Virus record (IMG/VR): IMGVR_UViG_3300009430_000004 | Location: 154,089-218,088 of that record | DNA length: 64,000 nt | Strand: one strand, 5' to 3' | Part shown: piece by piece, positions 15,373 to 58,778 of the stretch | Position numbering within the stretch: position 1 is the stretch's first letter | Layout of the letters: each line of letters starts with the position of its first letter | Translations under genes and position numbers: made by a program | The notes under the pieces: model-generated | Told to the model about the DNA's origin: nothing | Database searches by the model: none | What the model saw: only the letters and a program-made list of their open reading frames with translations

Positions 15373-15416
15373 AAAAAAATAAAATCGGGGTAGCTTATGC
15401 TACCCTTAATTTTTTT
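15373..15416. terminator. Bidirectional terminator
   Basis: GGGTAGC / GCTACCC between convergent genes. Confidence 0.7.
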
Positions 15417-15702
15417 GGCTTATTGACCTATTCTTAACCTCTATCTTCGTCCAATACCCATGAAGATGAGGGGTTGTTCGTATCATATTGAAAAATGAGC
15501 TCGGAATATCTCGTTTATATGTATTACAACTTATTATATGTTTAAGTATATCCAATGACACTATATTCTGTCGTATTAAACTGAACTCAAAATCCTCATT
15601 AAAGAATTCATATATAACATGATAATACACTGATAATTTAACCCTTTCAGCAATAGTTAGGTCTTCTCCATTTACAGTCTTAATTATACTCTCCATACTC
15701 AT
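15406..15702 (-). CDS. Hypothetical protein
   Basis: 98 aa, AGGGGG RBS, downstream of CGTA-class promoter. Confidence 0.55.
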   Translation of the reverse strand: MSMESIIKTVNGEDLTIAERVKLSVYYHVIYEFFNEDFEFSLIRQNIVSLDILKHIISCNTYKRDIPSSFFNMIRTTPHLHGYWTKIEVKNRSISQKN

Positions 15703-15804
15703 ACCCCCTAAAACCTTTGTCGGAACATAAAAAATATAAGTCCAAAAGATAAACTTATAATTTTTCCAATAGAATATAATAATAGATGCCGTACCTTAAC
15801 GTCA

Positions 15805-16730: not shown

Positions 16731-17014
16731 CAAGCGACAACAAACCATAAAATCAATACGGGATGTATCATATAAGATCCATAAAACTCAATCCTAAATT
16801 CATGAGAATCAACACCAAATTTTTCCTCACAGAATAATTTGAATTTTTCAATATCTTCAGGTGTTACATCTTCATATTTTACGTCCATACCTGCTTCTTT
16901 TAAAGCCTCTGTAAATCTCTCATTAGGTGTCAACTCACGAAATGAAGGTTGGTCATACTTCGATTTGTATTCATCATCAAATTTGATAATAGCCTTTTTC
17001 TTTTCGGCTTCCAT
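16727..17014 (-). CDS. Hypothetical protein
   Basis: 95 aa, AGGAGG RBS. Confidence 0.6.
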   Translation of the reverse strand: MEAEKKKAIIKFDDEYKSKYDQPSFRELTPNERFTEALKEAGMDVKYEDVTPEDIEKFKLFCEEKFGVDSHEFRIEFYGSYMIHPVLILWFVVAC

Positions 17015-17025
17015 TGTTATCCCTC

Positions 17026-17631
17026 CTACAGATTAATCTTGATGCAAATCTTTTCAGCTCTTAATTTAGCTTTATCAAGATGACCCATCAATATAAATAA
17101 ATGTTGAGGTTTTGAAACTGAAAATCCATTAATGGAAATTGCGTGTTTACTTATCTCCAAATGCCATGATGCTAGAGTTAAATCTTCTACTATCACGGAA
17201 TGTAAGTAAATTTCTTTCTCAAGTAGAATATCAATTATTGAACACATTAATACATTATCAACCTTTGTCTTACATAAGGTAAGGACATTCTTTACATCTA
17301 AAGAATCACCATATAGAATATTACTTCTGAGGTATGTTAACTGAAATATTGGTCCAGCATCTAATAGTTTGAAATCAAATATTGGATCAAGTCCAGTTGG
17401 CTTAGTTTGTTCATATATGTCCAACACATTGGTTGGGAATAGCAATTCCATTATATCTGAATCAATTTTTCTAGCAGCTTTATTTACTGCTTCGATATCA
17501 ATATCTTTTTCCATTCCAGAAAGTTTTCTTAATATTTCTCCGAATTTGTCTTGGGGGTTTGATTTTAAATCAATACCTATAAACCCAATTGTTGGTTCTG
17601 TTCCATTCATCTTTGCTTTTTCATTAAACAT
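17026..17631 (-). CDS. Hypothetical protein
   Basis: 201 aa, AGGGAG RBS. Confidence 0.6.
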   Translation of the reverse strand: MFNEKAKMNGTEPTIGFIGIDLKSNPQDKFGEILRKLSGMEKDIDIEAVNKAARKIDSDIMELLFPTNVLDIYEQTKPTGLDPIFDFKLLDAGPIFQLTYLRSNILYGDSLDVKNVLTLCKTKVDNVLMCSIIDILLEKEIYLHSVIVEDLTLASWHLEISKHAISINGFSVSKPQHLFILMGHLDKAKLRAEKICIKINL

Positions 17632-17744
17632 GTTTCCACATCTCCCTTTGTCATATTTTTTTAGTTTATTTGATTTTTACTATCTTTAATACATTTAAAT
17701 AATATACAAATAAATCGGCGTTTGTTGATTAGAGGTGATGAAGA

Positions 17745-18917
17745 ATGGGAATAGAATTAAATTCGCAACAAACCGATACAGTTGATAGATTAGTTAAATG
17801 GTGGCATAGTAGAGATAAACAAACCTTTGAGATATCAGGACCTGCTGGTTCTGGTAAGACTACATTGGTTTATTATCTAATTGAGCGAATAGGGATAGAC
17901 CCTAAAAAAGTATTATTTATGGCTTATGTTGGCAAGGCAACAATGGCACTTGCTAGAAAAGGAAATTTTGCTAAGACTATACATAGCACTATTTATAGAT
18001 TAGTTGAAGTTCCTAAACTAGATAATGAAGGAAATCCTATAAAGAAAAATAATAGGGTTGTAACAACAACTGTTTTTCAGAAGAAGGATAAGATAGATGA
18101 TGATATACAGGCGTTAGTTATTGATGAGGGTTCTATGGTAAATAAACAGATAGCTGAGGATATACTTAGCTTTAATTTGCCAATAATTGTACTAGGAGAC
18201 CTAAACCAGCTACCCCCTGTATTCGGAGACTCTTATTTCTTACAAAAACCTGATAGTGTACTTACTCAAGTTATGAGACAGATGGAAAATGACCCAATAG
18301 TACATTTAAGTCAGAGAGCTATAAGAGGAGAATATCTAAACATAGGTAAATATGGACCTATGTGTTTTGTTATTGATAAGGAAGTTATCAATGATAATTT
18401 ATTAATTAAGTCTGATATAGTTATCTGTGGAAAAAATAAAACAAGAGAAGATATCAATAACTATGTAAGACGACAAATTAAAGGAATTAAATCTGACATA
18501 CCAGTTATGGGAGAAAAACTTATATGTAGACAGAATAACTGGAACCTATCTGTTGGAGGGGATATATTCCTCATAAACGGTTTAATAGGTTATATGGAGG
18601 GTATCTATCTTGATACCTATAATAAGAAGTCTATTTGCATAGATTTCAGACCAGAGTTTATGGAAGATGACTACTTTGAGAAGATACCAATGGACTATGA
18701 ATACTTATTCCAGACTTATGAGGAAAAAAAACGAGGCAAGAGAAGTTACTATAATAAGTTTGAATTTGCATATGCCATTACTGCACACTTAGCACAAGGT
18801 TCGCAGTATGATAAAGTAATGATATATGACGAAAGAATAGGTGACAGAGATTACTATAGGAAATGGTTGTACACAGCCATAACTAGGGCTGTTAAAGGAT
18901 TAGTAGTAGCTGTATAA
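17745..18917 (+). CDS. SF1B helicase (RecD/Dda-like)
   Basis: GPAGSGKTT, IDEGSM, GDLNQLPPV, AYAITAHLAQGSQY, YTAITRA motifs. Confidence 0.9.
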   Translation: MGIELNSQQTDTVDRLVKWWHSRDKQTFEISGPAGSGKTTLVYYLIERIGIDPKKVLFMAYVGKATMALARKGNFAKTIHSTIYRLVEVPKLDNEGNPIKKNNRVVTTTVFQKKDKIDDDIQALVIDEGSMVNKQIAEDILSFNLPIIVLGDLNQLPPVFGDSYFLQKPDSVLTQVMRQMENDPIVHLSQRAIRGEYLNIGKYGPMCFVIDKEVINDNLLIKSDIVICGKNKTREDINNYVRRQIKGIKSDIPVMGEKLICRQNNWNLSVGGDIFLINGLIGYMEGIYLDTYNKKSICIDFRPEFMEDDYFEKIPMDYEYLFQTYEEKKRGKRSYYNKFEFAYAITAHLAQGSQYDKVMIYDERIGDRDYYRKWLYTAITRAVKGLVVAV

Positions 18918-19029
18918 AAAAAATAATATGCGGGAGGTCTATCTATCCAGATATAACCTCCCTCTTCCTTAGGGTAATTGATAATTAGACTATATTTTTT
19001 AGTGTCTCAATTATCATTTATGTGTATAC
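18916..19029 (-). ncRNA. Candidate early small RNA (~110 nt)
   Basis: CGTA-N17-TATATATTAT-N6-GTA promoter, 12-bp hairpin, terminator with T-tract only on this strand, no RBS-led ORF. Confidence 0.5.
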
Positions 19030-19066
19030 ACAATTATAATATATATCTGTGTTGGACTACTTTACG
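19027..19066 (-). promoter_or_regulatory. CGTA-N17-TATATATTAT-N6-GTA promoter
   Basis: ATAATATATA 19036-45, TACG 19063-66. Confidence 0.7.
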
Positions 19067-19098
19067 GTTTTCCTAAATACAGAAAAAATAATTTAGAT

Positions 19099-19133
19099 TA
19101 TATATTATATGTAGGTATCAGAACAAATTTATA
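19099..19133 (+). promoter_or_regulatory. Early (19099) and late (19122) promoters in tandem
   Basis: TATATATTAT ATGTAG GTA; AACA AATTTA TA. Confidence 0.65.
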
Positions 19134-19150
19134 AGAAGGGATGGGTTTAT

Positions 19151-19312
19151 ATGGAACCACCAAAGGTTTTAGCAGACCTTATGAAACCTTTGACTCAAAG
19201 GAACATACAATTGGCGACAGAAACGCCAGAAGAAAAAATGCAACGAATAAAAGACCAATTTGGTCTTTACCATGGTCCTGGTAAAAGGAAGAAAAAGAAG
19301 AAGAAAAAATAA
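19151..19312 (+). CDS. 53-aa protein with poly-lysine tail (not in ORF track)
   Basis: MEPPKVL...GPGKRKKKKKKK; AAGAAGGG RBS; early and late promoters directly upstream. Confidence 0.65.
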   Translation: MEPPKVLADLMKPLTQRNIQLATETPEEKMQRIKDQFGLYHGPGKRKKKKKKK

Positions 19313-19334
19313 ATATAAAAGGAGGGTGGGTTAA

Positions 19335-19613
19335 ATGGATTTAGAAAAATTGCAACAAATTATTGCTTACCTTGGAGGAGAGAATAAAATAGCAGGATTT
19401 GTATTTGACAATAGTGGAAGAAGACTATTTGAGAAAGATTTCAGTCTTGCTAAATATCTCATTCCTGATACTGAAGTTTTAGTATTTGTGGAAAAGGATG
19501 GTTATGGAAACACGTTTAAAGTGTTTAAAGCAGTTAGTGATATCCAGACTGTAATAGGAGTCGATGATGTTGCTACCATAGACCACATAGATACAAGATT
19601 TATAAGCATGTAA
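19335..19613 (+). CDS. Hypothetical protein
   Basis: 92 aa, AAGGAGGG RBS, terminator downstream. Confidence 0.65.
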   Translation: MDLEKLQQIIAYLGGENKIAGFVFDNSGRRLFEKDFSLAKYLIPDTEVLVFVEKDGYGNTFKVFKAVSDIQTVIGVDDVATIDHIDTRFISM

Positions 19614-19661
19614 AAAGAATATGTATATAGTAGGATTTTATTCTACTATATACATATTTTT
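19612..19661 (+). terminator. Intrinsic terminator
   Basis: AATATGTATATAGTAG / CTACTATATACATATT. Confidence 0.7.
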
Positions 19662-19685
19662 AATCTATATAAAGGAGGTGGGGTA

Positions 19686-20000
19686 GTGTTTGGTTTGAAA
19701 GATTCAAATATGCCTGTAACAGAATTTGATAGAGACCCTAGGAAACAAGAACTATTAGACAGATATAATCATGGAGACCCTATAGTAAAGAATGTAGTAG
19801 ATAGACTCAATGATTTAAAGTTTAATAAATCAGAAACAATTGATTGGGTCCGATATACTATCGTTAAAGAATTTGAGGATGTTATCTATTATTGCATGAA
19901 AGCTTATCAGGCTATATTGTCAGAGAAGGTTTCAAATGCTGGTAGTATATTTATCGTAGACAAATTATTTACGGTGGATGAGTTGACAAAAAAGGATTAG
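19686..20000 (+). CDS. Hypothetical protein
   Basis: 104 aa, AAGGAGG RBS, GTG start. Confidence 0.6.
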   Translation: MFGLKDSNMPVTEFDRDPRKQELLDRYNHGDPIVKNVVDRLNDLKFNKSETIDWVRYTIVKEFEDVIYYCMKAYQAILSEKVSNAGSIFIVDKLFTVDELTKKD

Positions 20001-20030
20001 ACCAAATAAATTATAAATTATAATTGGGAT

Positions 20031-20084
20031 AACAGTTAATTAAGAAATTTAACTGATATTTCAGTTATATATTATTATGCTGTA
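20031..20084 (+). promoter_or_regulatory. Late (20031) and early (20066) promoters
   Basis: AACA GTTAAT TA; TATATATTAT TATGCT GTA. Confidence 0.65.
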
Positions 20085-20108
20085 ATCAGTAAATAAATAA
20101 TCAAAAAA

Positions 20109-20130
20109 ATAATTATATTATTAGGAGGTA
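20109..20130 (+). repeat. 22-bp shared leader, copy 1
   Basis: ATAATTATATTATTAGGAGGTA, identical at 34853 and 45321. Confidence 0.9.
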
Positions 20131-20137
20131 AACAATC

Positions 20138-20617
20138 ATGGCTAAAGGAAAAAGAAAATTCGTTGAGAAAATCGCTCGTATTAAGGAGCTTCAGAAAGAG
20201 GCTGAAAAGGAAAGAAGAAAGGCGATAATTGAGTGTGCTCACCAAAATGAAAAAGGCAAGCTCAAGATTCACCCAGTTAACGAAAAGGGTGATTATGAAT
20301 GTAAATACTGTGAAGAGCAGTTCAACATGAACTCCATCAGCAGAAGTAACATTGAGGACGCAATCGAAACAATGCACAATGCTATTCAGCAAATCAGATG
20401 TTTCTCTGATCCTGAGGACGATGCTAAGCTTGTAAGATTACTTGGCGAACTTGACTTCAACATGCAGGAAGTTGGCGAGCTCTATGAGAGAATCGTTAAC
20501 CTATACGGCAAGAACAAGAAGAAGAACAGGGGTGACAAGTACAAAGATCATGATAGCTTCGGTAGCTACGGTGCATCCTCATTAAGCTTCATTGGTGGCG
20601 GAAAGAAAAATAAATAG
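20138..20617 (+). CDS. Putative Zn-ribbon protein with basic termini
   Basis: CAH...CKYC motif; carries the 22-bp shared leader. Confidence 0.6.
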   Translation: MAKGKRKFVEKIARIKELQKEAEKERRKAIIECAHQNEKGKLKIHPVNEKGDYECKYCEEQFNMNSISRSNIEDAIETMHNAIQQIRCFSDPEDDAKLVRLLGELDFNMQEVGELYERIVNLYGKNKKKNRGDKYKDHDSFGSYGASSLSFIGGGKKNK

Positions 20618-20648
20618 TAGAAAGCTGCATCAGTCTTTTTAGGTAGCG

Positions 20649-20689
20649 GATGTGTAAGATGGAGTACTCCATCTTACACATTCATTTTT
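20649..20689 (+). terminator. Intrinsic terminator
   Basis: ATGTGTAAGATGGAG / CTCCATCTTACACAT plus T-tract. Confidence 0.75.
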
Positions 20690-20766
20690 GTCTGTTTTAC
20701 AGACAATTATTTTTTGTATCAAAAGAAATTCCAATACGTAAGGGCGTAATAAATTACAAACTAACA

Positions 20767-20778
20767 AACATTATATTG
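20767..20778 (+). promoter_or_regulatory. Late-type promoter (topoisomerase B)
   Basis: AACA TTATAT TG. Confidence 0.55.
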
Positions 20779-20804
20779 GAGTATATTTAAGAAGGGGTGA
20801 TATA

Positions 20805-23231
20805 ATGGAAAAGTTTGTAGATGATGTTATAGAGCATAAAGAGGATGACATCGAGAAAATACAGACTAAACCCAATATGTATATCAGCTACTCAGGTAGA
20901 AGGGGTTCTAAACAGTTAGCTTATGAAAACATCAATAATGGTATTGATGAATGCATTAACCCTAATTCACCTGGAGATGAGATTGATATTGTAATTGATG
21001 AGACTGAAAACTCAATAAGTGTAACCGATAATGGTAGAGGAATTCAGTTTGAAAAGATGGAACTTGTCTGTACAAAGTTACAGGCTGGAAGTAAATTTAC
21101 TAGAGAGGGAAGCGGTGGTTCTGCTGGTGAAAACGGTGTAGGTATGACCGCTATGAATGCTCTCTCAGACTGGTTTGAAATCATTTCATATAGATATGGT
21201 GAAAGAGCCAAGGTAAGATTTGAGTTAGGAAAGCTAGTTCAACCTCTTACTGTAAAGAAAGTATCTGGGGATAAACATGGAACAACGGTCGCATTTAGAC
21301 CATCATCTATGTTCCTAGGAGAAGATTGTGCTATAGACTCTGATGAGTTATTGGCATGGACTGAAAAAATTATTTGTTTAGTACCACCTGAAATAAAGGT
21401 AAACTTTAATGTGATTAAGAAAGGAAAAGAATCAACAATCCAAAAGAAATTTAGAAATAAAAATGGTCTTTACGACTATTGCAAGAAGTTGGCTAAAAAG
21501 CCGCTTATAGACCCAATTCATTTTATGAGAACAATGAAAATGATGGAGAGAGTGAATACAATAACACCATCTAATTTAGATGATGCTATGAAATCACCAA
21601 ACTCGACATTTAAAGACGTAGAACGCTTTATTGGGCTAGAAGTGGCATTTACGTTCAATTCTGGTAGTGTAGACATGGTTGCTGATTCATTCTGTAATTT
21701 TATTAACACAGTAGAGAATGGTGTGCATGTAGATGCAGTTAAAACAGGTATATTACAATACCTAACTAAACAGACAAAAGATATGATGTCTGAGAAGGAA
21801 GCTAAGAATATTGATATAACCTTTGGTGATGCAGCTCAAGGTTTAGTATTAACAGTATACTTGAGCACTAATATGCAACCTCAGTTTGCATCTCAGACTA
21901 AAGAGAAGTTAACAAATAACGATTTCTTCAAACCTCTAAGAGATATGTCTTATAGAGCTTTGGATGAATATTTTAAGAAGAATACAAAAGAGCTGAAGAA
22001 GCTTACTGATATGATAAAGACTAATGCTAAGGCTAGAATAGAAGCCAACAAGGTTAGAAACTCAGTCATTAAAGGTGAGACAACTTCACTCGATGAGCAT
22101 AAATTAAAGAACTTTGCTCCTGCAAATAATAAGGGTAGAAATGAGTATAGAGAGTTATTCTTGATAGAAGGAGACTCAGCAATGGGCTCTGCTAGACAAG
22201 GAAGATTCGATAATGACACTCAAGCACTATTTGCCCTTAAGGGAGTCCCCCTAAACTCATTTAGCTTAAAGCTTGACAAAGTATTATTAAATGATGAGTT
22301 TAGAGGATTAACAAAAGTCTTAGGTTGTAACATAGGAGAAAGATTTGACATAACTAAGTTGAAGTATAAGAAGATTATCATCATGACTGACGCAGATATT
22401 GACGGTAATAGAATTACATCACTTATTTGTGCATTCTTCTTAGTGCATATGCCTGAGATAGTAAAACAAGGTTATCTGTATAAAGCAGTTACGCCTTTAT
22501 ATAAAATAAAGGATAATAAGAAACCTTTCATACTCAATAAACAAGAGTACATTGAAGTCTTTGAGGAAAGAGTTAGAAAGAACATCAGACTTATTAATCC
22601 TGAAACAAAGGTTGTATTCAAGGAAAAAGATATGAAGGAATTCTTGTTAAATAACAGAGAATACCTTGAAGAATTAGATAGAGTAGCAAATCATTTCGCA
22701 GTACATCCTATGATAGTTGAATTCTTAGCTATACATATGGATGATAGCGACTTCCTCAAAAAGCTTAGAAAGAAATTCCCTGAATTGAAAGTTGATGAAG
22801 ACAATGTATTGTCAGGTATATATGAAGGTAGATATCAGAATATAATACTTGATAAGATATTCAATAAAAGAGTCAACACTTTGAAGACTCTTATTAGAGA
22901 AGTCAATCAGAATAAAGCTTATTACATTCTTCATGAAGTTAGAGGTAAGGAGTTCGAAGATAGAGGGTTAATGTCAATCGGTGAGTTGTTAACATTATGT
23001 GAAAAGTTCCAACCTGAGATAGAAATGAGGTATAAGGGACTTGGTGAGTTAGACCCAGCTAAACTAAGAGAAACAACTCTTGACCCGAATAATAGAATAC
23101 TTATCAAACTTACTCTTGAAGACTTGGAAGCAGAGTTAACTAAGTTTAGAATATTACACGGAGATGACTCTGAAGAAAGAAAGAAGCTTATGGCACACTT
23201 CAAAATCAATAGGGAAGATCTTGATAACTAA
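20805..23231 (+). CDS. gyrB: Type IIA topoisomerase ATPase/TOPRIM subunit (GyrB/ParE)
   Basis: ENINNGIDE, DNGRGI, EGDSA, IMTDADIDG, RYKGLGE motifs. Confidence 0.93.
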   Translation: MEKFVDDVIEHKEDDIEKIQTKPNMYISYSGRRGSKQLAYENINNGIDECINPNSPGDEIDIVIDETENSISVTDNGRGIQFEKMELVCTKLQAGSKFTREGSGGSAGENGVGMTAMNALSDWFEIISYRYGERAKVRFELGKLVQPLTVKKVSGDKHGTTVAFRPSSMFLGEDCAIDSDELLAWTEKIICLVPPEIKVNFNVIKKGKESTIQKKFRNKNGLYDYCKKLAKKPLIDPIHFMRTMKMMERVNTITPSNLDDAMKSPNSTFKDVERFIGLEVAFTFNSGSVDMVADSFCNFINTVENGVHVDAVKTGILQYLTKQTKDMMSEKEAKNIDITFGDAAQGLVLTVYLSTNMQPQFASQTKEKLTNNDFFKPLRDMSYRALDEYFKKNTKELKKLTDMIKTNAKARIEANKVRNSVIKGETTSLDEHKLKNFAPANNKGRNEYRELFLIEGDSAMGSARQGRFDNDTQALFALKGVPLNSFSLKLDKVLLNDEFRGLTKVLGCNIGERFDITKLKYKKIIIMTDADIDGNRITSLICAFFLVHMPEIVKQGYLYKAVTPLYKIKDNKKPFILNKQEYIEVFEERVRKNIRLINPETKVVFKEKDMKEFLLNNREYLEELDRVANHFAVHPMIVEFLAIHMDDSDFLKKLRKKFPELKVDEDNVLSGIYEGRYQNIILDKIFNKRVNTLKTLIREVNQNKAYYILHEVRGKEFEDRGLMSIGELLTLCEKFQPEIEMRYKGLGELDPAKLRETTLDPNNRILIKLTLEDLEAELTKFRILHGDDSEERKKLMAHFKINREDLDN

Positions 23232-26975: not shown

Positions 26976-27015
26976 GATATACGGCTAAAAACCGTATATC
27001 TTATCTTATTTTTTT
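26968..27015. terminator. Bidirectional terminator
   Basis: AAGATAAGATATACGG / CCGTATATCTTATCTT. Confidence 0.75.
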
Positions 27016-28180
27016 ATGCTTCTTCCTTTTCATAAAGGACATTAAATACTTCCCTTATATCCATCTTACCATCAAACATATCCTCATTGAACTTTCTTAA
27101 CCAAGCTGAAAGCATTTGTTGCTTCTCATATGTTGGGTCATTGAGGTAGTTTTCATAGTAACCTTTATAAGCTGCAAGGTTATCCTTTAATTCTTCCTTC
27201 AAATCCTTCGGAAGGTTTGGATCATCCAAATCCCTTTCGAGTTTGTTAATCATATTCTTCATTCTTGTCTGATTCTTAGGATGTACACCTATGAATGTAG
27301 ACATGATATTCTGCATAATTCCAGCTATGTCATCAATAACATTAAGAACTGGAACATTTCTAACTATTCTGTTGTACATTTTATTTGGGTCATTCTGCAA
27401 CTTATCTAACGCTGTTGCAAGTGGCTGTGCATACCCATATGATGCAGCAAAGCTATCAGAGAATCTCTCCATACCATATCTAAATAGGTTTGATATGTCG
27501 AAATTAACAACCTGTTGAGCCATAGCAAGTGGGCTACCAAGTAATGGTCCAGAAATGTGATAAAGAAGTCTATTAAGCCCAGCACCTATATTATAGAATA
27601 CTGATAGATACTTCTTAAAGAACCTTTCAACACCCATTCTGATTTCAGTTATTAACTGTACAACCCAATGCTGAACAGCCCAGCCTATAGGACTGTATAA
27701 CAGAGTTGGTATTGTGCATAGGAAGTAAAATGGAGATGTGTCAAAATTGTGTCCTATCTCATGAAGTATGATAGCCATCATTTCTTTCTCATTCAATTTA
27801 GTCTGAGAAATAAGTGCTGTGTCAAGGAACACATAGATTTTCAATCTCTCATTGATAAATTTACCTGATTCTTCCCTTTTCTCGATGTTCTTAAGATACA
27901 TCATAGGGAAAGATGATATTGGTGTGCAGGCATTAGGTACTGAATCTTGCCAGTGAATTTTAATATACTTAACTCCAAAGAAATCAGCAAGAATCTTCTG
28001 TAATTTCTGGTTAGGTTCTGATTTATCTATATCAGTCATCGCCCTGAAAATACTCTTATCGTTATCCTTTCTGATTATCTCTGCAATTTTAGCAAGTTCT
28101 GCCTCCGCTGCTTCGAATTGTTTAGGCTTACCTAGATAAGCTTCCATAACAGGGTTATTTTTTCTTGAAAAAATAGCCAC
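27014..28180 (-). CDS. Zincin-like metallopeptidase, putative virion protein
   Basis: IILHEIGH and downstream E.FSDSFAASYG motif; late promoter. Confidence 0.7.
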   Translation of the reverse strand: MAIFSRKNNPVMEAYLGKPKQFEAAEAELAKIAEIIRKDNDKSIFRAMTDIDKSEPNQKLQKILADFFGVKYIKIHWQDSVPNACTPISSFPMMYLKNIEKREESGKFINERLKIYVFLDTALISQTKLNEKEMMAIILHEIGHNFDTSPFYFLCTIPTLLYSPIGWAVQHWVVQLITEIRMGVERFFKKYLSVFYNIGAGLNRLLYHISGPLLGSPLAMAQQVVNFDISNLFRYGMERFSDSFAASYGYAQPLATALDKLQNDPNKMYNRIVRNVPVLNVIDDIAGIMQNIMSTFIGVHPKNQTRMKNMINKLERDLDDPNLPKDLKEELKDNLAAYKGYYENYLNDPTYEKQQMLSAWLRKFNEDMFDGKMDIREVFNVLYEKEEA

Positions 28181-28270: not shown

Positions 28271-29431
28271 ATGGCAAATGATAGAGTATTATTAAATGAA
28301 TTATACCCTTTAATAGAGAAGGGTCTATCCAAAAAAGAAAATACCCAGAAGCTTAAGCTGGCTGTAAGCCAATTCCTTGATAGGAACAATGAAAAATTAA
28401 CCACTAATGGTCCAGTATATAGAATTATATTCTCAGAAGAGGATGCTAATAAACTATACGAAGCTATAGAAGTTGACCCGCTTACAATCAAGGGAATAAT
28501 TAATAGGTCACCGACAATTAAGAGTCAGTGGCAGATAATGAATAATCCTTTCAACTCTGCAATAGCCTTGACTATTAGATATTATAAGGTTAACAAGAAC
28601 CCTGAAATGGTTAATGCAACGCTTATATATTTAACAATGTCAATGTATCCATCATTACACTATAAGTATTTTCAATATGAACCTAATGAAAATATAATGA
28701 ATTATACCATCAATAATCTATCAAATAAGTTTAAAATCAAACAAACTGGTACAATTTATGCTGCCTTAGTAGATACTGTACAAGTTAGTGATAGGACTTA
28801 TACTGACGATTTGATACGTGGTACTGATAAGGATATCGTTGACTATATCGAAGCAGTTAAGACAAGAATGAATAGTTTGCTTAGAAAAATATCAAATGAA
28901 TTTTATGAGAATGATAAAAAAAAGAATTATCTTAATACTGAAAGCGATAGCTTCGAAGAAGATAATTATCATGAAGCTGATAGCAATATCTACGCTGTGG
29001 AACGTGTTACTAACAATGTCGTCCTAAAACTTATAGTTAATGGACCAAATATACAGCTAGTTAATATTGCGGCTAAAATGAGCCAAGTAAGTGTTAGTGA
29101 ACTGAGGAATTATGTTAATACCTTGGTTATCGGGGAGAATCGTGAACAAATTAAGACTGTTGTTGAATGTATTTTATTCTTATATTTATTTGATTCACAG
29201 AACAAAGTTGAGGATATAGGAAGCAATAAATTCCTATTCTATTGTCTTGAAGTATATAAGAAATCTAATACTACAGACGAGAATATCATAAAGATTAAGA
29301 AGATTCTTGATGAATGGTTGGAAGACTTAGGAACATACAAAAAAACTCAGAGACTTGCTACTATCAATAATTTTAGAAGGGCTTTGTTTACCTTCTTCGT
29401 TCTAAGTATTCAACATACGGGAAATAGCTAG
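28271..29431 (+). CDS. Late all-alpha protein of unknown function
   Basis: 386 aa, AAAGGGG RBS, late promoter. Confidence 0.6.
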   Translation: MANDRVLLNELYPLIEKGLSKKENTQKLKLAVSQFLDRNNEKLTTNGPVYRIIFSEEDANKLYEAIEVDPLTIKGIINRSPTIKSQWQIMNNPFNSAIALTIRYYKVNKNPEMVNATLIYLTMSMYPSLHYKYFQYEPNENIMNYTINNLSNKFKIKQTGTIYAALVDTVQVSDRTYTDDLIRGTDKDIVDYIEAVKTRMNSLLRKISNEFYENDKKKNYLNTESDSFEEDNYHEADSNIYAVERVTNNVVLKLIVNGPNIQLVNIAAKMSQVSVSELRNYVNTLVIGENREQIKTVVECILFLYLFDSQNKVEDIGSNKFLFYCLEVYKKSNTTDENIIKIKKILDEWLEDLGTYKKTQRLATINNFRRALFTFFVLSIQHTGNS

Positions 29432-29595
29432 AAAAAAAAGCGGGGTCAGAGATAAAAGCATAAAGCCTGGCGTATAGCCCCCCATTGACCCCCCCATCAT
29501 GTGGGAAATTAAACCATGTAAACCATGGATGATGGCTGTTTAAATAGTCACCACATTATCATTTCCCAAGGAATTGACATATTATATATACACAC
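29432..29595 (-). ncRNA. Candidate early structured RNA (~160 nt)
   Basis: CGTA-class promoter, multiple stems, GGGGUCA/UGACCCC terminal stem plus U8. Confidence 0.55.
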
Positions 29596-29632
29596 ATGAT
29601 AATAATATATATTTTATTAGTGTGACTTTACG
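29593..29632 (-). promoter_or_regulatory. CGTA-N17-TATATATTAT-N6-GTG promoter
   Basis: ATAATATATA 29602-11, TACG 29629-32. Confidence 0.7.
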
Positions 29633-29638
29633 AATTAT

Positions 29639-29680
29639 AAAAAAATAAGGAAGATGATTAATTTCATCTTCCTTATTTTT
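29639..29680 (-). terminator. AATAAGG-family terminator
   Basis: AAAAATAAGGAAGATGA / TCATCTTCCTTATTTTT. Confidence 0.75.
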
Positions 29681-30212
29681 CTAACTCATTTATTAACTTA
29701 TTCATTATAACAGTATTACTTATATATCGTAATACAGTTGGATCATTACTTAATGCCTGCCTGCATATATCTTCAGTTTGAATCTTGCAGAATTGTAATG
29801 CTCTAGGAGTTTTCTTAACAGCTTCCATGCATATTTCTTCAGTCTGTTCTTTTACAAATTGTAATGCAGTACCATTCTGCCTAACAGCTTCTATACACAG
29901 CTCATGAGTTTGGTTATCCTTTATCATATTAAGTATCCTACCATTACGCTTAACAGCTTCAAGCTTCATTTCATATGTAGGATTCATTATAAACTGATAT
30001 GACAAAGGATTGTTTCTAATAGCCATTAGACATAATTCCTCAGTTTGGCTTTTAACATATTCCAAGGCATCACCATTCTGTGTAATGGCTACACGACATG
30101 CTTCCTCAGTTTGTGGACTAAAATACCTCAATAACAATCCGTCACGCCTTAAATCGTCAATAATAACAGATGGTAAATGATAGTGGTTTCCTCTCATAGC
30201 AAATTCTCCCAT
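29673..30212 (-). CDS. DUF4116-like repeat protein
   Basis: Five ~24-aa repeats of EE(L/I)C.EAV..NG.AL.(Y/F)VK.QT. Confidence 0.75.
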   Translation of the reverse strand: MGEFAMRGNHYHLPSVIIDDLRRDGLLLRYFSPQTEEACRVAITQNGDALEYVKSQTEELCLMAIRNNPLSYQFIMNPTYEMKLEAVKRNGRILNMIKDNQTHELCIEAVRQNGTALQFVKEQTEEICMEAVKKTPRALQFCKIQTEDICRQALSNDPTVLRYISNTVIMNKLINELEK

Positions 30213-32476: not shown

Positions 32477-33064
32477 TTAACCGTAAACTATAATGCCTTT
32501 TTTGGTACTGATACATCCAGTTAACCAACCAAAGGAATCTTGTTCACCTGCAAATACTCTATAACCTGCTCCTTCGACCTTCTTAATATTGGTCCAATTA
32601 CATCTTCCATTACTGGATATCAATGCACCGCAAGCTAACCCATCTATAATACGAGCAGCATCATCCTCATTATCACTATTCATGTCAATATATAATCGAC
32701 CTTCATAGTCATATGACTTAACTTCAGATTCACCAGATTCAACTTTCTTGAGCATGTCAAGAAGTTCTGTCAAGTAATCCTTAGTTTCTGGATGTATCTT
32801 CTCTTCAAGAGGTGAAGGGTAATTATCAAAATGTCTCCAACCGAGACTGAGTAAGTATTCAAAAGCTTCAGCATTTCTATTACTGCTGAAATCTGAAACA
32901 GTCATTGAGATTTTGCTATAATCTGTTCTAACATTGAAAGTCTTAGCTTCCTCATCCTTTTGTCCGAGTTCTTTCCTTGTTAGGTTAACTCCATCAAAAG
33001 ATACAATCTCAAGAATGCTACCCATATAGGTTTTAATAAAAACTGGTTTTTCTAATCTTATCAT
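32477..33064 (-). CDS. Hypothetical protein
   Basis: 195 aa, GGGAGG RBS, CGTA-class promoter; C-terminal GEQDSFGWLTGCI motif. Confidence 0.6.
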   Translation of the reverse strand: MIRLEKPVFIKTYMGSILEIVSFDGVNLTRKELGQKDEEAKTFNVRTDYSKISMTVSDFSSNRNAEAFEYLLSLGWRHFDNYPSPLEEKIHPETKDYLTELLDMLKKVESGESEVKSYDYEGRLYIDMNSDNEDDAARIIDGLACGALISSNGRCNWTNIKKVEGAGYRVFAGEQDSFGWLTGCISTKKGIIVYG

Positions 33065-33150
33065 GATTTAATTCCTCCCACAGAATCAAAATATTTTTCA
33101 CTAGCATCTATATTTACTAGCGGAACATACAAATATATTATCTACGTATG

Positions 33151-33190: not shown

Positions 33191-33206
33191 ATTTTAATAT
33201 TATAGG

Positions 33207-33218
33207 AACATAGAAATA
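33207..33218 (+). promoter_or_regulatory. Late promoter
   Basis: AACA TAGAAA TA. Confidence 0.65.
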
Positions 33219-38183: not shown

Positions 38184-40496
38184 ATGAAAGGAGACAGGCA
38201 AATGTCAAATGTTCAACCGAAACCACAATTAAGAAAAGAAAAAGACTATATTAATACGACAACGATAAGGTTGAAAGAGACCTTATGTGAAAAAGAGGAA
38301 AAGTACCATTTTAAAGATGATATATTCGGTATGACATTACTAACGAACCCTGGATATATAAGTGCTTCAAGAAATATAATGTTTACATCACATTTGAGGC
38401 AGTTCGTTAACCTGTTGAACCCTGAGTTTCCAAAGGTGTTTACCAACTATGAAAATATAGTTGGTAAATACTCAACTGGATATTATAGGGCGAAAACAGA
38501 TTTAAAGGTAGTTGATAAAATAGCTAAGTTCGGCAACGGAGTATTGGACAATCATCTATATCTTCTATTCACATATGATGAAGAGAATGATAAATATGAT
38601 GTTATTCAGAAACGTATAGTTGAAGACTTAACAGAAAAGTTCGGGTTCCCTTACAATAATGAAGTAATGGATGCTAAGGAACCAGGAGATGAAGTAAGAG
38701 CAGGAGAGGTGTTATACAAGACACCGTCATATGATGAGGACATGAATTACTGTTATGGTAAGAATGTCAAGTTCATGTATCTGCTAGATAATGACACCAT
38801 AGAGGACGCAATAAAGTGTTCTAAGTCATTTGCAAAGTCTATGAAATCTAAGGAAGTAGAAACTGTTAAAGTGTCCCTAAATGATAACGATATATTCTGT
38901 AATTATTATGGGACAAACGAAGAGTACAAGTGCTTCCCAGATATTAATGAGTTTATAAAGGATAAGATAGTTTGTGTTAAACGAAGAATACACAACAATC
39001 AGCTTTTATATGATGTAAAGAAATCAAATCTAAGAAAAATCAATTTTATGTCAGACAGCCTATCATTCTGTGAAGGTAGAATTGTAGACATAAATATCTA
39101 TTCAAATAAACCAATAGAAGAGATAGAAGACAATAGCTTTAATAGGCAATTATTAAAATATATTAAAATGCAGAGAGAATTCTACATCAAGGTTTATGAG
39201 AGATGTAAAAAGATAATAGACTCTGGCTCAAAGTATTCCAGTGAAGTTAACTTCTACTATAAGAAAGCTAAGAACATTCTCGATGAAAAGTATAAATGGA
39301 AAGAAGAAGATAATTCAGTATTCAGTAATATGATTATTGAATTCTTAATCGAGAGAGATGTTGAACTTTCAGTGGGACAGAAGATTACAGGACGATATGG
39401 AAATAAGGGAGTAGTATCTGAAATACTTCCAGACGAGGAAATGCCGTTCTTGGAAACTGGGGAAAGAGTTGATATCATATTCAATACTCTCGGCGTTATA
39501 AACAGAACAAATTCATTCCAGTTAATGGAGCAGTCAATTAACTTTATTTGTAACAGAGTAAGGGAAAGACTGAAGATTATGAATGATTTGAAAGAGAAGG
39601 AAAAATTATTATTTAAGATAATTAATTACTTCAATGACAAGCAGGCTGATAGTCTGCATGATTACTATAAGAGATTGGCTAAAGTCGACAAAGAAGATTT
39701 CTTTGAAGATATTATAGAAAGAGGAATATTTGTTCATATCCCGCCACTATGGGAAGACAGGAGTCTATTCGATAGACTTAACGACATTTATAAAGAATTC
39801 ACATGGATTAAACCATATGATGTTTATGTCAATAGGTTTGGTAGAAAGATAAAGATGTTGAAACAGTTAATAGTCGGGGATATGTACGTTATAAAATTAA
39901 AACAAACATCAAAGAAAGGTTTCTCGGTAAGAGCAACAGGTTCTCTTAGTAAGAGAGGCGTTCCAGAGAAATCTAATAAGGCTAAAAATCATCAGGAGCT
40001 TTATTCAAGAACACCTATAAGAATAGGTATTGATGAAAATCTCAATACTGCAATTGGTGTTGAAACCGAAGAAATAGCTAAGATCCACTTATTCTATAGG
40101 TCATCAGTTATAGGAAGACGAGACCTAGGAGAAAGATTAACAACAAATATTAAGGAAGTAAAGGAATTTAAATATTCACCAGAGTTTAAGAATAGAAATG
40201 TTGAGATTCTTCAAGCTTATCTTAAAGCAATGGGTCTGAAAATAGACTTTGAAGAGGATAAGTATTTCATAGATATATTCCTAGGTAGTATGGAGGAATA
40301 TAATTATGGGGATAAAACCTTTATATGCACTAGGAGAGAGTTTGAAGATAGAAAAACTAGGATGGACGTTGAAACTGACTTCCGAGAAAAGAACTATTTC
40401 GTTGGCTCTAAGGCTGAATATGAGGAAGCTGTCGATAAAAGAGTCAATGATGTCAATTTAAGAAAGTCTAAGTATGTAATAGATGTAAAAATGTAA
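38184..40496 (+). CDS. RNA polymerase beta C-terminal half, probably non-virion RNAP
   Basis: TIEDAI, GQKITGRYGNKGVVS..LPDEEMP, VDIIFNTLGVINR, VGDMYVIKLK motifs; early motif upstream. Confidence 0.9.
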   Translation: MKGDRQMSNVQPKPQLRKEKDYINTTTIRLKETLCEKEEKYHFKDDIFGMTLLTNPGYISASRNIMFTSHLRQFVNLLNPEFPKVFTNYENIVGKYSTGYYRAKTDLKVVDKIAKFGNGVLDNHLYLLFTYDEENDKYDVIQKRIVEDLTEKFGFPYNNEVMDAKEPGDEVRAGEVLYKTPSYDEDMNYCYGKNVKFMYLLDNDTIEDAIKCSKSFAKSMKSKEVETVKVSLNDNDIFCNYYGTNEEYKCFPDINEFIKDKIVCVKRRIHNNQLLYDVKKSNLRKINFMSDSLSFCEGRIVDINIYSNKPIEEIEDNSFNRQLLKYIKMQREFYIKVYERCKKIIDSGSKYSSEVNFYYKKAKNILDEKYKWKEEDNSVFSNMIIEFLIERDVELSVGQKITGRYGNKGVVSEILPDEEMPFLETGERVDIIFNTLGVINRTNSFQLMEQSINFICNRVRERLKIMNDLKEKEKLLFKIINYFNDKQADSLHDYYKRLAKVDKEDFFEDIIERGIFVHIPPLWEDRSLFDRLNDIYKEFTWIKPYDVYVNRFGRKIKMLKQLIVGDMYVIKLKQTSKKGFSVRATGSLSKRGVPEKSNKAKNHQELYSRTPIRIGIDENLNTAIGVETEEIAKIHLFYRSSVIGRRDLGERLTTNIKEVKEFKYSPEFKNRNVEILQAYLKAMGLKIDFEEDKYFIDIFLGSMEEYNYGDKTFICTRREFEDRKTRMDVETDFREKNYFVGSKAEYEEAVDKRVNDVNLRKSKYVIDVKM

Positions 40497-40636: not shown

Positions 40637-41209
40637 ATGGGAGGAATAGAAATGAAAAGTATAGTAAACTTAATAGTATTAATTATTATCTGCGTGGTAG
40701 GAGTTGAGGTGGCAAATAAAATCGTTAGCTGTTTTAACAACGGTGAGGAGGTAAAGGTTGTAGCTATAATAACTACAATAGTTGTTGTGGCAATCATTGT
40801 TCTAGCAAAAGAATTTTTATGTGTTGGAACCGAACCTGGTATAAATGAGGAAGATGAGGACGATGACTCAAAAGGAGGTCGAGTAATTAACCTAACTCAT
40901 TACAGAAGGGAAGATGGTGAATACGCTCAAATCACACCTGTTAAGGTGATAGATAATGTCAATAAGTTTGATAATGATGAGGATTTGTATGTTCCTGCAT
41001 TATCTAGGGTTGAAAAGGAGAACTTAATACATTATGAAAGGATTGATACGGAGTCAATCAAACAAGAAGTTCTCAGGATGATTTCAACTGGCAACAGAAG
41101 AATTGAAATGGAAGTTGTCGAAAGATTAAACAGACTTGCACAAGTAGAGGACACTTCAGAGTTTATGGAAGAGAATCCTCAAGTATTAAAATTCATATTT
41201 AGTTATTAA
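40637..41209 (+). CDS. Membrane protein with two N-terminal TM segments
   Basis: Two hydrophobic stretches then acidic domain; CGTA-class promoter; true start likely ATG 40652. Confidence 0.6.
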   Translation: MGGIEMKSIVNLIVLIIICVVGVEVANKIVSCFNNGEEVKVVAIITTIVVVAIIVLAKEFLCVGTEPGINEEDEDDDSKGGRVINLTHYRREDGEYAQITPVKVIDNVNKFDNDEDLYVPALSRVEKENLIHYERIDTESIKQEVLRMISTGNRRIEMEVVERLNRLAQVEDTSEFMEENPQVLKFIFSY

Positions 41210-46599: not shown

Positions 46600-46671
46600 A
46601 GGAGGTGTGAATAAAATCAGTTTTATTTTATATTGACACAAAAAATCTATGTTCCTGAAGGGGGAAATTCG

Positions 46672-58541: not shown

Positions 58542-58778
58542 ATGATAGGATTAAGAATACCAAAAACGGATCAACATATAAGACATGATAATTTTGATGA
58601 TGTCAAGGCTTATGTTGAAAAGGAATACCCAAATGTTAAATTTGATGAGCTGGACGATAATGTTAAAACAGGAATGCAAATGGAATATTATCTAACCAGT
58701 AAAATCAAGATACCTGATGGAGATGCTAGTAAGTATGTAATACCTTACTCCACAGGTATAGAAGAGGATAAAAAATAA
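58542..58778 (+). CDS. Hypothetical protein
   Basis: 78 aa, GAGGTG RBS, CGTA-class promoter. Confidence 0.6.
   Translation: MIGLRIPKTDQHIRHDNFDDVKAYVEKEYPNVKFDELDDNVKTGMQMEYYLTSKIKIPDGDASKYVIPYSTGIEEDKK

What the first reader, a model, noticed from the sequence alone, without database searches (positions are those of the whole stretch)
18916..19066. Immediate-early ~110-nt sRNA convergent with the helicase gene
Seen: a CGTA-N17-TATATATTAT-N6-GTA promoter on the minus strand, a 12-bp hairpin with one bulge (18979-19016), then a GGGAGGU/ACCUCCC terminator whose U-tract exists only on this strand. The terminator stem holds an SD-like AAGGAAGAGGGAGGU with no start codon behind it. Only a leaderless 10-codon ORF (MIIETLKNIV) is possible. 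Inference: a second early sRNA, possibly antisense to the helicase 3' UTR or a ribosome/protein decoy.
Basis: partly seen in the sequence, partly recalled or inferred. Interest (0 to 1): 0.7.

Follow-up and report, generated by a model that had tools for sequence, protein, structure and literature searches.

The report
ORF-less early promoter–terminator cassette, jumbo phage
Just after the helicase gene of an uncultivated AR9-like jumbo phage lies a small unit on the opposite strand, made of an early phage promoter, about 112 nt of hairpin-forming non-coding sequence and a terminator; it most likely makes a short early RNA, a plausible but unproven and fairly ordinary kind of phage regulatory element.

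Summary
The window is the right third of a 218-kb groundwater jumbo phage that has two sets of RNA polymerase beta/beta' homologues. TATATATTAT-N6-G matches the AR9 early (virion RNA polymerase) promoter consensus. It occurs 49 times in the genome, 44 of them intergenic and 40 within 200 nt upstream of a co-directional gene. Eleven copies also carry CGTA exactly 17 nt upstream, an element AR9 lacks.

The copy at 19036-19066(-) predicts a start at G19029. Downstream lie a 12-bp hairpin, a 13-bp hairpin and a T8 run that overlaps the helicase stop codon. No credible ORF is present.

Among 15 relatives (helicase at least 62% identical), promoter, structure and T-run occur together in four and are all absent in eleven. 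So the hairpins are not simply the helicase terminator. The four RNAs are not alignable overall; one relative shares a suggestive hairpin 1.

No RNA data were listed, Rfam gave nothing, and no phage target scored above shuffles. The SD-like stem is common among this genome's terminators, so the decoy idea has no support.

Best reading: an autonomous ORF-less early unit whose function depends on its position, probably antisense to helicase read-through transcripts. A decayed gene cassette remains a serious rival.

The parts
19063..19066 (-). CGTA upstream element (-37..-34) of the bipartite early promoter
   Evidence: Exact CGTA-N17-TATATATTAT: 7 in the window, 11 in the genome, 0 in the reversed control. 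AR9 has no exact copy.
19036..19045 (-). TATATATTAT core (-16..-7), AR9-type early (virion RNAP) promoter element
   Evidence: 49 copies in the genome, 44 intergenic, 40 within 200 nt upstream of a co-directional gene. AR9 consensus AAATATATATTAT-(6N)-G from PMC5312081.
19029..19029 (-). Predicted transcription start (G, 6 nt after the core; RNA begins GUAUAC)
   Evidence: Inferred from the AR9 rule and from G/A at this position in nearly all copies. Not measured.
18979..19016 (-). Hairpin 1: 8+4 bp, bulged G19008, 13-nt A-rich loop
   Evidence: Fold; inverted repeat I3/I8. A similar stem base (AAUGAUAAU...AUUAUCA) occurs in relative L241.
18985..19017 (-). 10-codon mini-ORF MIIETLKNIV*; probably not translated
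   Evidence: Translation. It has a 12-nt leader without SD and its start codon lies in the stem. No counterpart was seen on reading the L005, L127 and L241 RNAs.
18932..18962 (-). Terminator hairpin GGGAGGUU-a-UAUCU-GGAU-AGAUA-GACCUCCC (13 bp)
   Evidence: dG -17.9; I7. One U-G pair forms only in the minus-strand RNA.
18916..18923 (-). T8 tract (tail ...AUUAUUUUUUUU), predicted RNA 3' end; overlaps the helicase stop codon
   Evidence: 45 of 86 intergenic terminators in this genome have TTA directly before the T-run.
17745..18917 (+). Dda/RecD-like SF1 helicase, convergent neighbour; no T-run terminator of its own
   Evidence: Pfam AAA_30, AAA_19 and UvrD_C_2. 36% identity to the PBS1/AR9 Dda-like helicase. 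No plus-strand terminator listed after it.
19099..19115 (+). Divergent early promoter (TATATATTAT-ATGTAG-G, no CGTA) for ORF 19151-19312 and downstream genes
   Evidence: It forms a 20-nt inverted repeat with the minus-strand promoter (I1).
19200..19207 (-). TATGTTCC motif on the same strand, 133 nt upstream of CGTA, inside ORF 19151-19312 (antisense)
   Evidence: The same motif lies 7-25 nt upstream of CGTA in the L005, L127 and L241 cassettes. Function unknown.

Best explanation
The feature is an autonomous early transcription cassette without an ORF, a non-coding 'moron'. It sits in inverse orientation between the helicase stop codon and the promoter of the next plus-strand gene.

Proposed mechanism:
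1. A bipartite AR9-type early promoter (CGTA at -37, TATATATTAT at -16..-7) is read by the phage's injected multisubunit RNA polymerase.
2. Transcription starts at G19029 and produces an RNA of about 112 nt with two stable hairpins.
3. It stops at the second hairpin plus U-tract, exactly at the helicase stop codon, so the helicase coding region is not transcribed antisense.

Among relatives, position, orientation, promoter and terminator are conserved while the RNA sequence is not. I therefore think the unit most likely acts in cis. The helicase has no T-run terminator of its own, so its mRNA should read through into the downstream genes. The early RNA would be perfectly complementary to that 3'UTR/intercistronic segment. 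Duplex formation, perhaps with RNase III-type processing or convergent-transcription interference, would then uncouple or tune helicase and downstream expression, as lambda OOP does for cII.

Shown: the sequence signals, their statistics and their co-occurrence in relatives. Inferred: transcription, RNA ends, timing and the antisense mechanism.
For: - Promoter family: 49 cores in the genome, 44 intergenic in a genome about 90% coding, 40 upstream of co-directional genes. 11 exact bipartite copies against 0 in the control. The consensus equals the mapped AR9 early promoters.
- Polymerases: the genome encodes two sets of RNAP beta/beta' homologues.
- Terminator orientation: 86 intergenic hairpin + T-run terminators exist, 72 co-directional with the preceding gene. 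The one at 18923(-) has no minus-strand gene upstream for 8 kb, so it makes sense only as a partner of the 19029 start.
- ORF content: no minus-strand ORF of 20 aa or more lies between start and terminator.
- Relatives: cassettes at the same slot and orientation occur in L005, L127 and L241 (helicase 69, 71 and 62% identical). Each has CGTA-N17-TATATATTAT-N6-G, a strongly structured RNA of 105-137 nt (z = -6.3, -6.1, -9.7) and a T-run abutting the helicase stop.
- All-or-none pattern: 11 other relatives have 20-75 nt spacers with no minus-strand promoter, no structure (MFE -5.2 or weaker) and, but for an A6 in L237, no A-run at the stop.
- Hairpin 1: L241 hairpin 1 contains a G-U pair and a WIN-like stem base. 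A model built from L241 hits WIN hairpin 1 on the minus strand at 14.8 bits, against 7.7 on the plus strand.
Against: - No transcript evidence: only one DNA metagenome run holds the sequence and no RNA run was listed.
- The U-tract starts 8 nt after the stem.
- The four cassette RNAs do not align overall.
- The WIN/L241 hairpin similarity is not significant in a 191-kb search, where 15-bit hits have E of about 1.4.
- Folding energies do not discriminate the strands.
- The helicase tree leaves cassette-bearing and cassette-less phages in a polytomy, so one origin cannot be told from repeated insertion.
- Helicase read-through across the cassette is inferred only from the lack of a plus-strand T-run terminator.
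Confidence: 0.4

Rival explanations
1. The unit is a relic or empty expression cassette. An early accessory gene (moron) once sat in this slot, and its ORF was lost while promoter and terminator remain. The short RNA is then a by-product without a function of its own. Recombination among the repeated promoter modules could keep the promoter intact.
For: - In L014, L015 and L041 (helicase 59% identical) the same slot holds a minus-strand early-type promoter, an SD, a 58-aa ORF and a terminator abutting the helicase stop.
- Eight of the 11 CGTA-class promoters drive small orphan proteins.
- The first 20 nt or so of the RNA resemble the leaders of sibling CGTA-class mRNAs.
- GGGAGG lies at about the distance from the start where those mRNAs have their SD.
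- Another CGTA promoter (genome 43709) is followed by 1.4 kb of SD + mini-ORF debris.
- The cassette is absent from 11 of 15 relatives.
Against: - Four lineages separated by 30-40% helicase divergence each keep a perfect 14/14 bipartite promoter, correct spacing, a strong terminator and unusually stable internal structure (z -3 to -10).
- No ORF remnant is visible.
- GGGAGGU is one arm of a 13-bp hairpin, which is not what a deletion scar would leave.
Confidence: 0.25
2. The unit is a trans-acting early sRNA or decoy that base-pairs with host or phage mRNAs, or titrates a protein or the ribosome.
For: - The RNA is predicted to be stable and structured, with a 12-nt single-stranded 5' end and an A-rich 13-nt loop.
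- Jumbo phages are reported to make short intergenic sRNAs (PMC11512511).
- Expression from an early promoter would suit host takeover.
Against: - The best duplexes of its accessible segments with all 218 phage translation-initiation regions are no better than those of dinucleotide shuffles.
- No seed is conserved among the four cassette RNAs.
- The SD-like stem arm is generic: 38 of 86 terminators have one, and here it is sequestered in the stem.
- Rfam gave no match.
- The host is unknown, so host targets could not be tested.
Confidence: 0.15
3. The hairpins are only the helicase's own (bidirectional) terminator, and the minus-strand promoter match is fortuitous or silent.
For: - The hairpins fold as well or better on the plus strand (-31.1 against -27.0 kcal/mol).
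- The plus strand has a U-rich UCUUCCUU tail after the GC hairpin.
Against: - Eleven relatives have no hairpin after the helicase.
- Hairpins appear only together with the minus-strand promoter and the minus-strand T-run (4 of 4).
- A composition-based estimate of chance occurrences of the exact bipartite motif in the whole genome is about 0.02, against 11 observed.
- The T8 run is on the minus strand only.
Confidence: 0.05
4. The unit acts at the DNA level next to the replication genes. Either the transcript primes or activates a replication origin (as with T7 or T4 promoter-origins), or the unit is a recombination module like the T4 PeSL elements.
For: - The unit lies inside the replication gene cluster (DnaB-like helicase, Dda-like helicase, gyrase B/A).
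- Terminator-promoter junctions (...TTATTTTTTT-CGTA...) recur around accessory genes. From my own knowledge, this resembles the T4-type promoter-early/stem-loop cassettes.
Against: - No AT-rich unwinding element follows the start; GC-rich hairpins follow instead.
- Cumulative GC skew in the window turns near 10 kb, not here, and follows gene orientation.
- Most relatives lack the unit, which is unexpected for a primary origin.
Confidence: 0.05

Closest known systems
Early (virion RNA polymerase) promoters of Bacillus phage AR9/PBS1 and Yersinia phage phiR1-37
   Same: The core and spacing match: AAATATATATTAT-(6N)-G(+1) in AR9 (PMC5312081) against AGATATATATTAT-AATTGT-G here. The phage also has two sets of split RNAP beta/beta' homologues and AACA-N6-TA late-type motifs. 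A weak BLAST hit of this promoter falls on an annotated phiR1-37 promoter.
   Different: This copy has an extra element, CGTA(A/T)(A/T)(A/T)T at -37, and a constrained WAWTRT discriminator. AR9 has 26 core+G sites but no exact CGTA-N17 copy. This copy has no gene behind it.
Lambda OOP RNA (77-nt antisense RNA convergent on cII); comparison from my own knowledge
   Same: Both are short RNAs with their own promoter and intrinsic terminator, no ORF, and an orientation convergent on the 3' end of a neighbouring gene. Both would be complementary to that gene's transcript.
   Different: OOP overlaps 55 nt of the cII coding sequence; here only 2 nt of the stop codon and the presumed 3'UTR overlap. 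A different polymerase is involved, there is no sequence similarity, and the effect on the target is untested.
Short intergenic or 5'UTR-derived sRNAs of jumbo phages 201phi2-1 and phiKZ found by ONT-cappable-seq
   Same: Those phages also have their own RNAPs and show transcription units where a terminator follows a start within 250 nt. Eleven such units were found in 201phi2-1, three of them intergenic (PMC11512511).
   Different: Those RNAs were detected experimentally; this one is only predicted. There is no homology, the phage clade differs, and this unit is convergent on a helicase.
Morons and T4-type promoter-early/stem-loop (PeSL) cassettes; comparison from my own knowledge
   Same: All are self-contained promoter + terminator units with presence/absence polymorphism among relatives. 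Here too, repeated early-promoter and terminator modules flank small accessory genes.
   Different: This cassette carries no ORF, and its order is promoter, structured RNA, terminator.

Membership tests
AR9-type early (virion RNAP) promoter | Consensus AAATATATATTAT-(6N)-G(+1) | tested here: met
   AGATATATATTAT-AATTGT-G at 19048-19029(-), 12 of 13 core positions plus G(+1).
AR9-type early (virion RNAP) promoter | The motif family is intergenic and points at genes in this genome | tested here: met
   44 of 49 copies are intergenic and 40 of 49 lie within 200 nt upstream of a co-directional gene. This copy is intergenic but has no gene behind it.
AR9-type early (virion RNAP) promoter | The phage encodes two multisubunit RNAPs | tested here: met
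   Two Rpb2_6 and two Rpb1_2 regions in separate ORFs.
AR9-type early (virion RNAP) promoter | Early transcription from this site, independent of protein synthesis | not testable with these tools
   No RNA run was listed.
Intrinsic (factor-independent) terminator | Stable GC-rich stem-loop | tested here: met
   13-bp stem with GGAU loop, dG -17.9 kcal/mol.
Intrinsic (factor-independent) terminator | U-tract directly after the stem | tested here: inconclusive
   The U8 run starts 8 nt after the stem (GCAUAUUA). Several other terminators in this genome behind co-directional genes have gaps of 6-10 nt. It was missed by the generic scan.
Cis-antisense RNA (OOP-like) | Own promoter and terminator, no ORF, convergent on a gene | tested here: met
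Cis-antisense RNA (OOP-like) | The opposite-strand transcript actually overlaps it, and its level or processing changes | not testable with these tools
   Only indirect: there is no plus-strand T-run terminator between the helicase and 20710.
Trans-acting base-pairing sRNA | Target complementarity above chance | tested here: not met
   Duplex energies against 218 phage translation-initiation regions are no better than shuffles. The host is unknown.
Trans-acting base-pairing sRNA | A conserved seed among homologues | tested here: not met
   WIN, L005, L127 and L241 do not align beyond promoter and tail. Only the WIN/L241 hairpin-1 stem base is shared.
Any Rfam family | Covariance-model match | tested here: not met
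   No hit at the gathering score in the window. Within 17000-21000 at E up to 1 there were only two chance-level matches, elsewhere in that region and unrelated to the finding.
Small protein gene | ORF with SD and start codon, conserved in relatives | tested here: not met
   Only an SD-less 10-codon ORF inside hairpin 1. No counterpart was seen on reading the other three cassettes.

The most novel reading that the evidence does not exclude
This jumbo-phage clade may carry a distinct class of early promoters (CGTA at -37 plus the AR9-type core) that drive accessory cassettes, several of them without an ORF: this 112-nt RNA, a ~165-nt RNA at window 29595(-) and a ~1.4-kb ORF-poor transcript at genome 43709(-). 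The slot behind the Dda-like helicase would then be repeatedly occupied by different, highly structured early RNAs. These RNAs would be genuine early regulatory or anti-defence molecules, not debris.
Probability: 0.2. Interest if true: 0.7.

Novelty: new member of a known kind. Interest (0 to 1): 0.4.

Why it matters
If transcribed as predicted, this would be an early non-coding RNA made by a phage-encoded multisubunit RNA polymerase in a clade with no cultured member. It would also be an example of a promoter-to-terminator cassette that carries RNA rather than protein. Three things follow from the comparative pattern:
- Four cassettes in one slot with different sequences offer a natural experiment on RNA function that depends on position rather than sequence.
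- The CGTA -35-like element is a testable extension of the AR9-type early promoter.
- The work gives a promoter and terminator grammar for annotating this large family of gut, rumen and groundwater jumbo phages.

Without transcript data or a host, it remains a well-founded prediction of a known kind of element rather than a surprise.

Tried and rejected
- RNA evidence: one DNA groundwater metagenome run holds the sequence and no RNA run was listed. Read laying was not used because contigs of the source sample would add nothing.
- Close DNA relatives: none in cultured phages. A distant search gave only promoter-like fragments.
- Rfam and tRNA scans: nothing.
- Collection scans for the L005 and L127 RNA 5' ends: no hits.
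- Collection scan for the bipartite motif: mostly single, probably chance hits in unrelated contigs; not pursued.
- Trans-target search among phage translation-initiation regions: no signal above shuffles.
- Strand assignment from folding energies: not discriminating.
- Helicase tree to ask whether cassette carriers form a clade: unresolved polytomy.
- Single-sequence covariance model of L241 hairpin 1: WIN hairpin 1 was not recovered in the 191-kb search. It scored 14.8 bits when only the orthologous 301 nt were searched, which is suggestive and post hoc.
- MAFFT alignments of the cassettes were uninformative or out of register.
- One translate call was off by one base and was corrected.
- Rejected: a sigma-70 reading of the region (18 sites against 15 expected), the ribosome-decoy reading, the mini-ORF, and another genetic code (coding density is about 90% under table 11).

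Full report
**Context.** The window is bases 154089-218088 of a 218,088-bp IMG/VR virus record with direct terminal repeats. Its only listed holder is a groundwater DNA metagenome. GC content is about 32%. The genome encodes two separate sets of multisubunit RNA polymerase beta- and beta'-like proteins. Gene 17745-18917(+) is an SF1 Dda/RecD-like helicase whose best cultured relatives are Bacillus phages PBS1 and AR9 at 36% identity. It sits in a replication cluster followed by small ORFs and gyrase B/A. No near-identical cultured phage exists. A second IMG/VR contig carries the same region with 1 mismatch in 9,170 bases, so the sequence is not an assembly accident.

**The observation.**
- CGTA at 19066-19063.
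- A 17-nt spacer.
- TATATATTAT at 19045-19036.
- AATTGT, then GTA from 19029.
- Hairpin 1 at 19016-18979 (8+4 bp, bulged G).
- A second hairpin at 18962-18932 (8+5 bp, loop GGAU).
- GCATATTA followed by T8 at 18923-18916, which overlaps the helicase stop codon (18915-18917).

The 113-nt RNA folds at -27 kcal/mol (z = -3.2; 1 of 200 shuffles folds as well). The only ORF is MIIETLKNIV* at 19017-18985. It has a 12-nt leader, no SD, and a start codon inside the stem.

**Is the promoter real?**
- AR9 early promoters, mapped by dRNA-seq and primer extension, read AAATATATATTAT-(6N)-G(+1) and are attributed to the injected virion RNAP (PMC5312081).
- In this genome TATATATTAT occurs 49 times. 44 copies are intergenic although about 90% of the genome is coding, and 40 lie within 200 nt upstream of a co-directional gene start, usually followed by G or A at +1, an SD and ATG.
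- Eleven copies also carry CGTA exactly 17 nt upstream, against 0 for the reversed control. From base composition I estimate about 0.02 chance occurrences.
- In the window, 13 copies match at up to 2 mismatches against 2.3 expected.
- This subclass has a constrained WAWTRT discriminator and also occurs in relatives.
- AR9 has 26 core+G sites but no exact CGTA-N17 copy. The -37 element is therefore a clade-specific addition.
- AACA-N6-TA motifs, the AR9 late-promoter type, are enriched upstream of genes without the early motif. The overall transcription grammar thus looks AR9-like.

**Is the terminator real, and whose is it?**
- A genome-wide scan found 86 intergenic hairpin + T-run sites, 72 of them co-directional with the preceding gene. 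45 have TTA directly before the T-run.
- The site at 18923(-) fits (dG -17.9, T8, tail ATTA-T8). Its 6-8 nt gap between stem and T-run is at the long end of what other terminators here show.
- No plus-strand T-run terminator follows the helicase; the next one on the plus strand is at 20710.
- No minus-strand gene lies upstream of the cassette until 27014-28180. A minus-strand-only terminator at this place therefore makes sense only as the partner of the start at 19029.
- The SD-like GGGAGGU arm is not special: 38 of 86 terminators carry a 4-nt SD-like core in the 5' arm.

**Relatives.** The helicase has more than 2,000 homologues, mostly on uncultivated contigs of 200-260 kb, and the neighbourhood is syntenic.
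- I examined 15 phages with helicase identity of 62% or more.
- Four carry, directly after the helicase stop and on the opposite strand, CGTA-N17-TATATATTAT-N6-G, then 105-137 nt of strongly structured RNA, then a T-run abutting the stop codon.
- The four are the window, L005 (z = -6.3), L127 (z = -6.1) and L241 (z = -9.7).
- The other eleven have spacers of 20-75 nt with no minus-strand promoter, no structure (MFE -5.2 or weaker) and, but for an A6 in L237, no A-run at the stop.
- Promoter, hairpins and T-run thus come and go together. This argues against the hairpins being merely the helicase terminator, and against a chance promoter.
- In L014, L015 and L041 (59% identity) the same slot holds a minus-strand early-type promoter, an SD, a 58-aa ORF and a terminator. 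The slot therefore accepts convergent early cassettes of several kinds.
- The helicase tree does not resolve whether cassette carriers are a clade.

**Are the RNAs homologous?**
- Beyond promoter, initial GUA and tail they do not align.
- WIN and L241 share the base of hairpin 1 (AAUGAUAAU ... AUUAUCA), an A6 loop motif and a C-rich flank. Their inner stems differ on both sides (AGAC/GUCU against UAUG/CAUA), and L241 has a G-U pair that forms only in the minus-strand RNA.
- A covariance model built from L241 hairpin 1 did not recover WIN in a 191-kb search, where 15-bit hits have E of about 1.4.
- Restricted to the orthologous 301 nt, the model hits WIN hairpin 1 on the minus strand at 14.8 bits (E = 0.0025), against 7.7 bits on the plus strand.
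- I treat this as suggestive and post hoc. Folding energy does not tell the strands apart.

**What does it do?**
- No RNA data could be found and Rfam gives nothing.
- Duplex predictions between the accessible parts of the RNA and all 218 phage translation-initiation regions are no better than for shuffled RNAs. The host is unknown.
- What is conserved is place, orientation, promoter and terminator, not sequence. That pattern is expected for an element acting in cis, where complementarity to the opposite-strand transcript is automatic. It is not expected for a trans-acting seed.
- The helicase lacks its own early motif. It has a near-match to the late-type motif 44 nt upstream of its ATG (TACA-TTTAAA-TA at 17690-17701), and it probably reads through the cassette into the next genes.
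- I therefore favour an early antisense or convergent unit that tunes or uncouples helicase read-through, in the manner of lambda OOP (my own knowledge).
- I put about 0.65 on the transcription unit existing as described. I put about 0.4 on the explanation as a whole.

**The main rival.** The main rival is a decayed gene cassette.
- The first 20 nt of the RNA resemble the leaders of sibling CGTA-class mRNAs.
- GGGAGG lies about where those mRNAs have their SD.
- Another CGTA promoter is followed by 1.4 kb of SD + mini-ORF debris.
- Against this rival stand the perfect promoters, the strong terminators and the unusual structure kept in four diverged lineages.

**Comparison and novelty.** The promoter is a member of the AR9/phiR1-37 early-promoter family with an added -37 element. 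A weak BLAST hit falls on an annotated phiR1-37 promoter. The unit as a whole resembles lambda OOP and the short intergenic transcription units reported in 201phi2-1 and phiKZ. I class it as a new member of a known kind. Interest is moderate. It would rise if the ORF-less CGTA cassettes (this one, window 29595(-) and genome 43709(-)) prove to be a family of early functional RNAs.

Noticed in passing
window 29428-29632 (-): A second orphan CGTA-class early promoter (predicted start 29595) is followed by about 165 nt without an ORF and a GACCCCGC-T8 terminator. It is convergent on plus-strand gene 28271-29431 (phrog_2921, unknown function). The RNA is G-rich with two G6-7 runs, has no Rfam hit and is not unusually structured (z = -0.8).
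   Followed up: partly
L240 (G000:C1:42200-43800), minus strand, genome 43709 to 42318: A third orphan CGTA-class promoter is followed by about 1.39 kb with no minus-strand ORF over 39 aa. The stretch holds several SD + start codons with immediate stops, has no Rfam hit, and ends at a strong terminator (dG -24.6, T9). It may be a decayed gene block or a long non-coding early transcript.
   Followed up: partly
window 19200-19207 (-), 15722-15729 (-), 33122-33129 (-), 33205-33212 (-), 46648-46655 (+); L005, L127, L241: The motif TT[GC]TATGTTCC recurs: TATGTTCC occurs 25 times against about 8 expected from base composition, and 10 copies are intergenic. It often lies 7-25 nt upstream of CGTA promoters on the same strand, or at +24..+28 in their leaders, where it forms the 3' arm of a 5' hairpin. 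It could be a second promoter type or a regulator or RNA element. It lies directly upstream of three of the four helicase-slot cassettes.
   Followed up: partly
window 17690-17701 (+) and genome-wide: AR9-like late-promoter motifs (AACA-N6-TA, often AAAACAAT-TAAATAA) are enriched about 40-50 nt upstream of genes lacking the early motif. The helicase has a near-match (TACA-TTTAAA-TA) 44 nt upstream of its ATG and no early motif, which suggests it belongs to a non-early class.
   Followed up: partly
window 19026-19045 / 19099-19118: The minus-strand cassette promoter and the plus-strand promoter of ORF 19151-19312 form a 20-nt, 80% inverted repeat 53 nt apart, that is, back-to-back divergent early promoters.
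   Followed up: no
L014 3737-4030 (also L015, L041): In phages with 59% identical helicase the same slot holds a convergent early-type promoter, an SD, a 58-aa ORF (MGKMEEKIYETRARL...) and a hairpin whose T7 run is on the minus strand (A7 on the plus strand), abutting the helicase stop.
   Followed up: partly
L005 3272-3979 (+): A relative carries an Anti-Pycsar Apyc1 / metallo-beta-lactamase-fold gene directly upstream of the helicase. The window phage has no such gene there.
   Followed up: no
window 38946-39950 (+) and genome 92598-93299 (-), 129468-129899 (+), 44485-44688 (-): There are two RNAP beta-like and two beta'-like coding regions. They are consistent with a virion and a non-virion multisubunit RNA polymerase as in AR9 and phiKZ.
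   Followed up: partly
window 15406-15702 (-), 29673-30212 (-), 32477-33064 (-), 40652-41209 (+), 58542-58778 (+): The protein genes driven by CGTA-class promoters are small orphans. One has DUF4116 repeats; the others have no Pfam or PHROG match. Several of their leaders begin with a 5'-terminal hairpin.
   Followed up: partly
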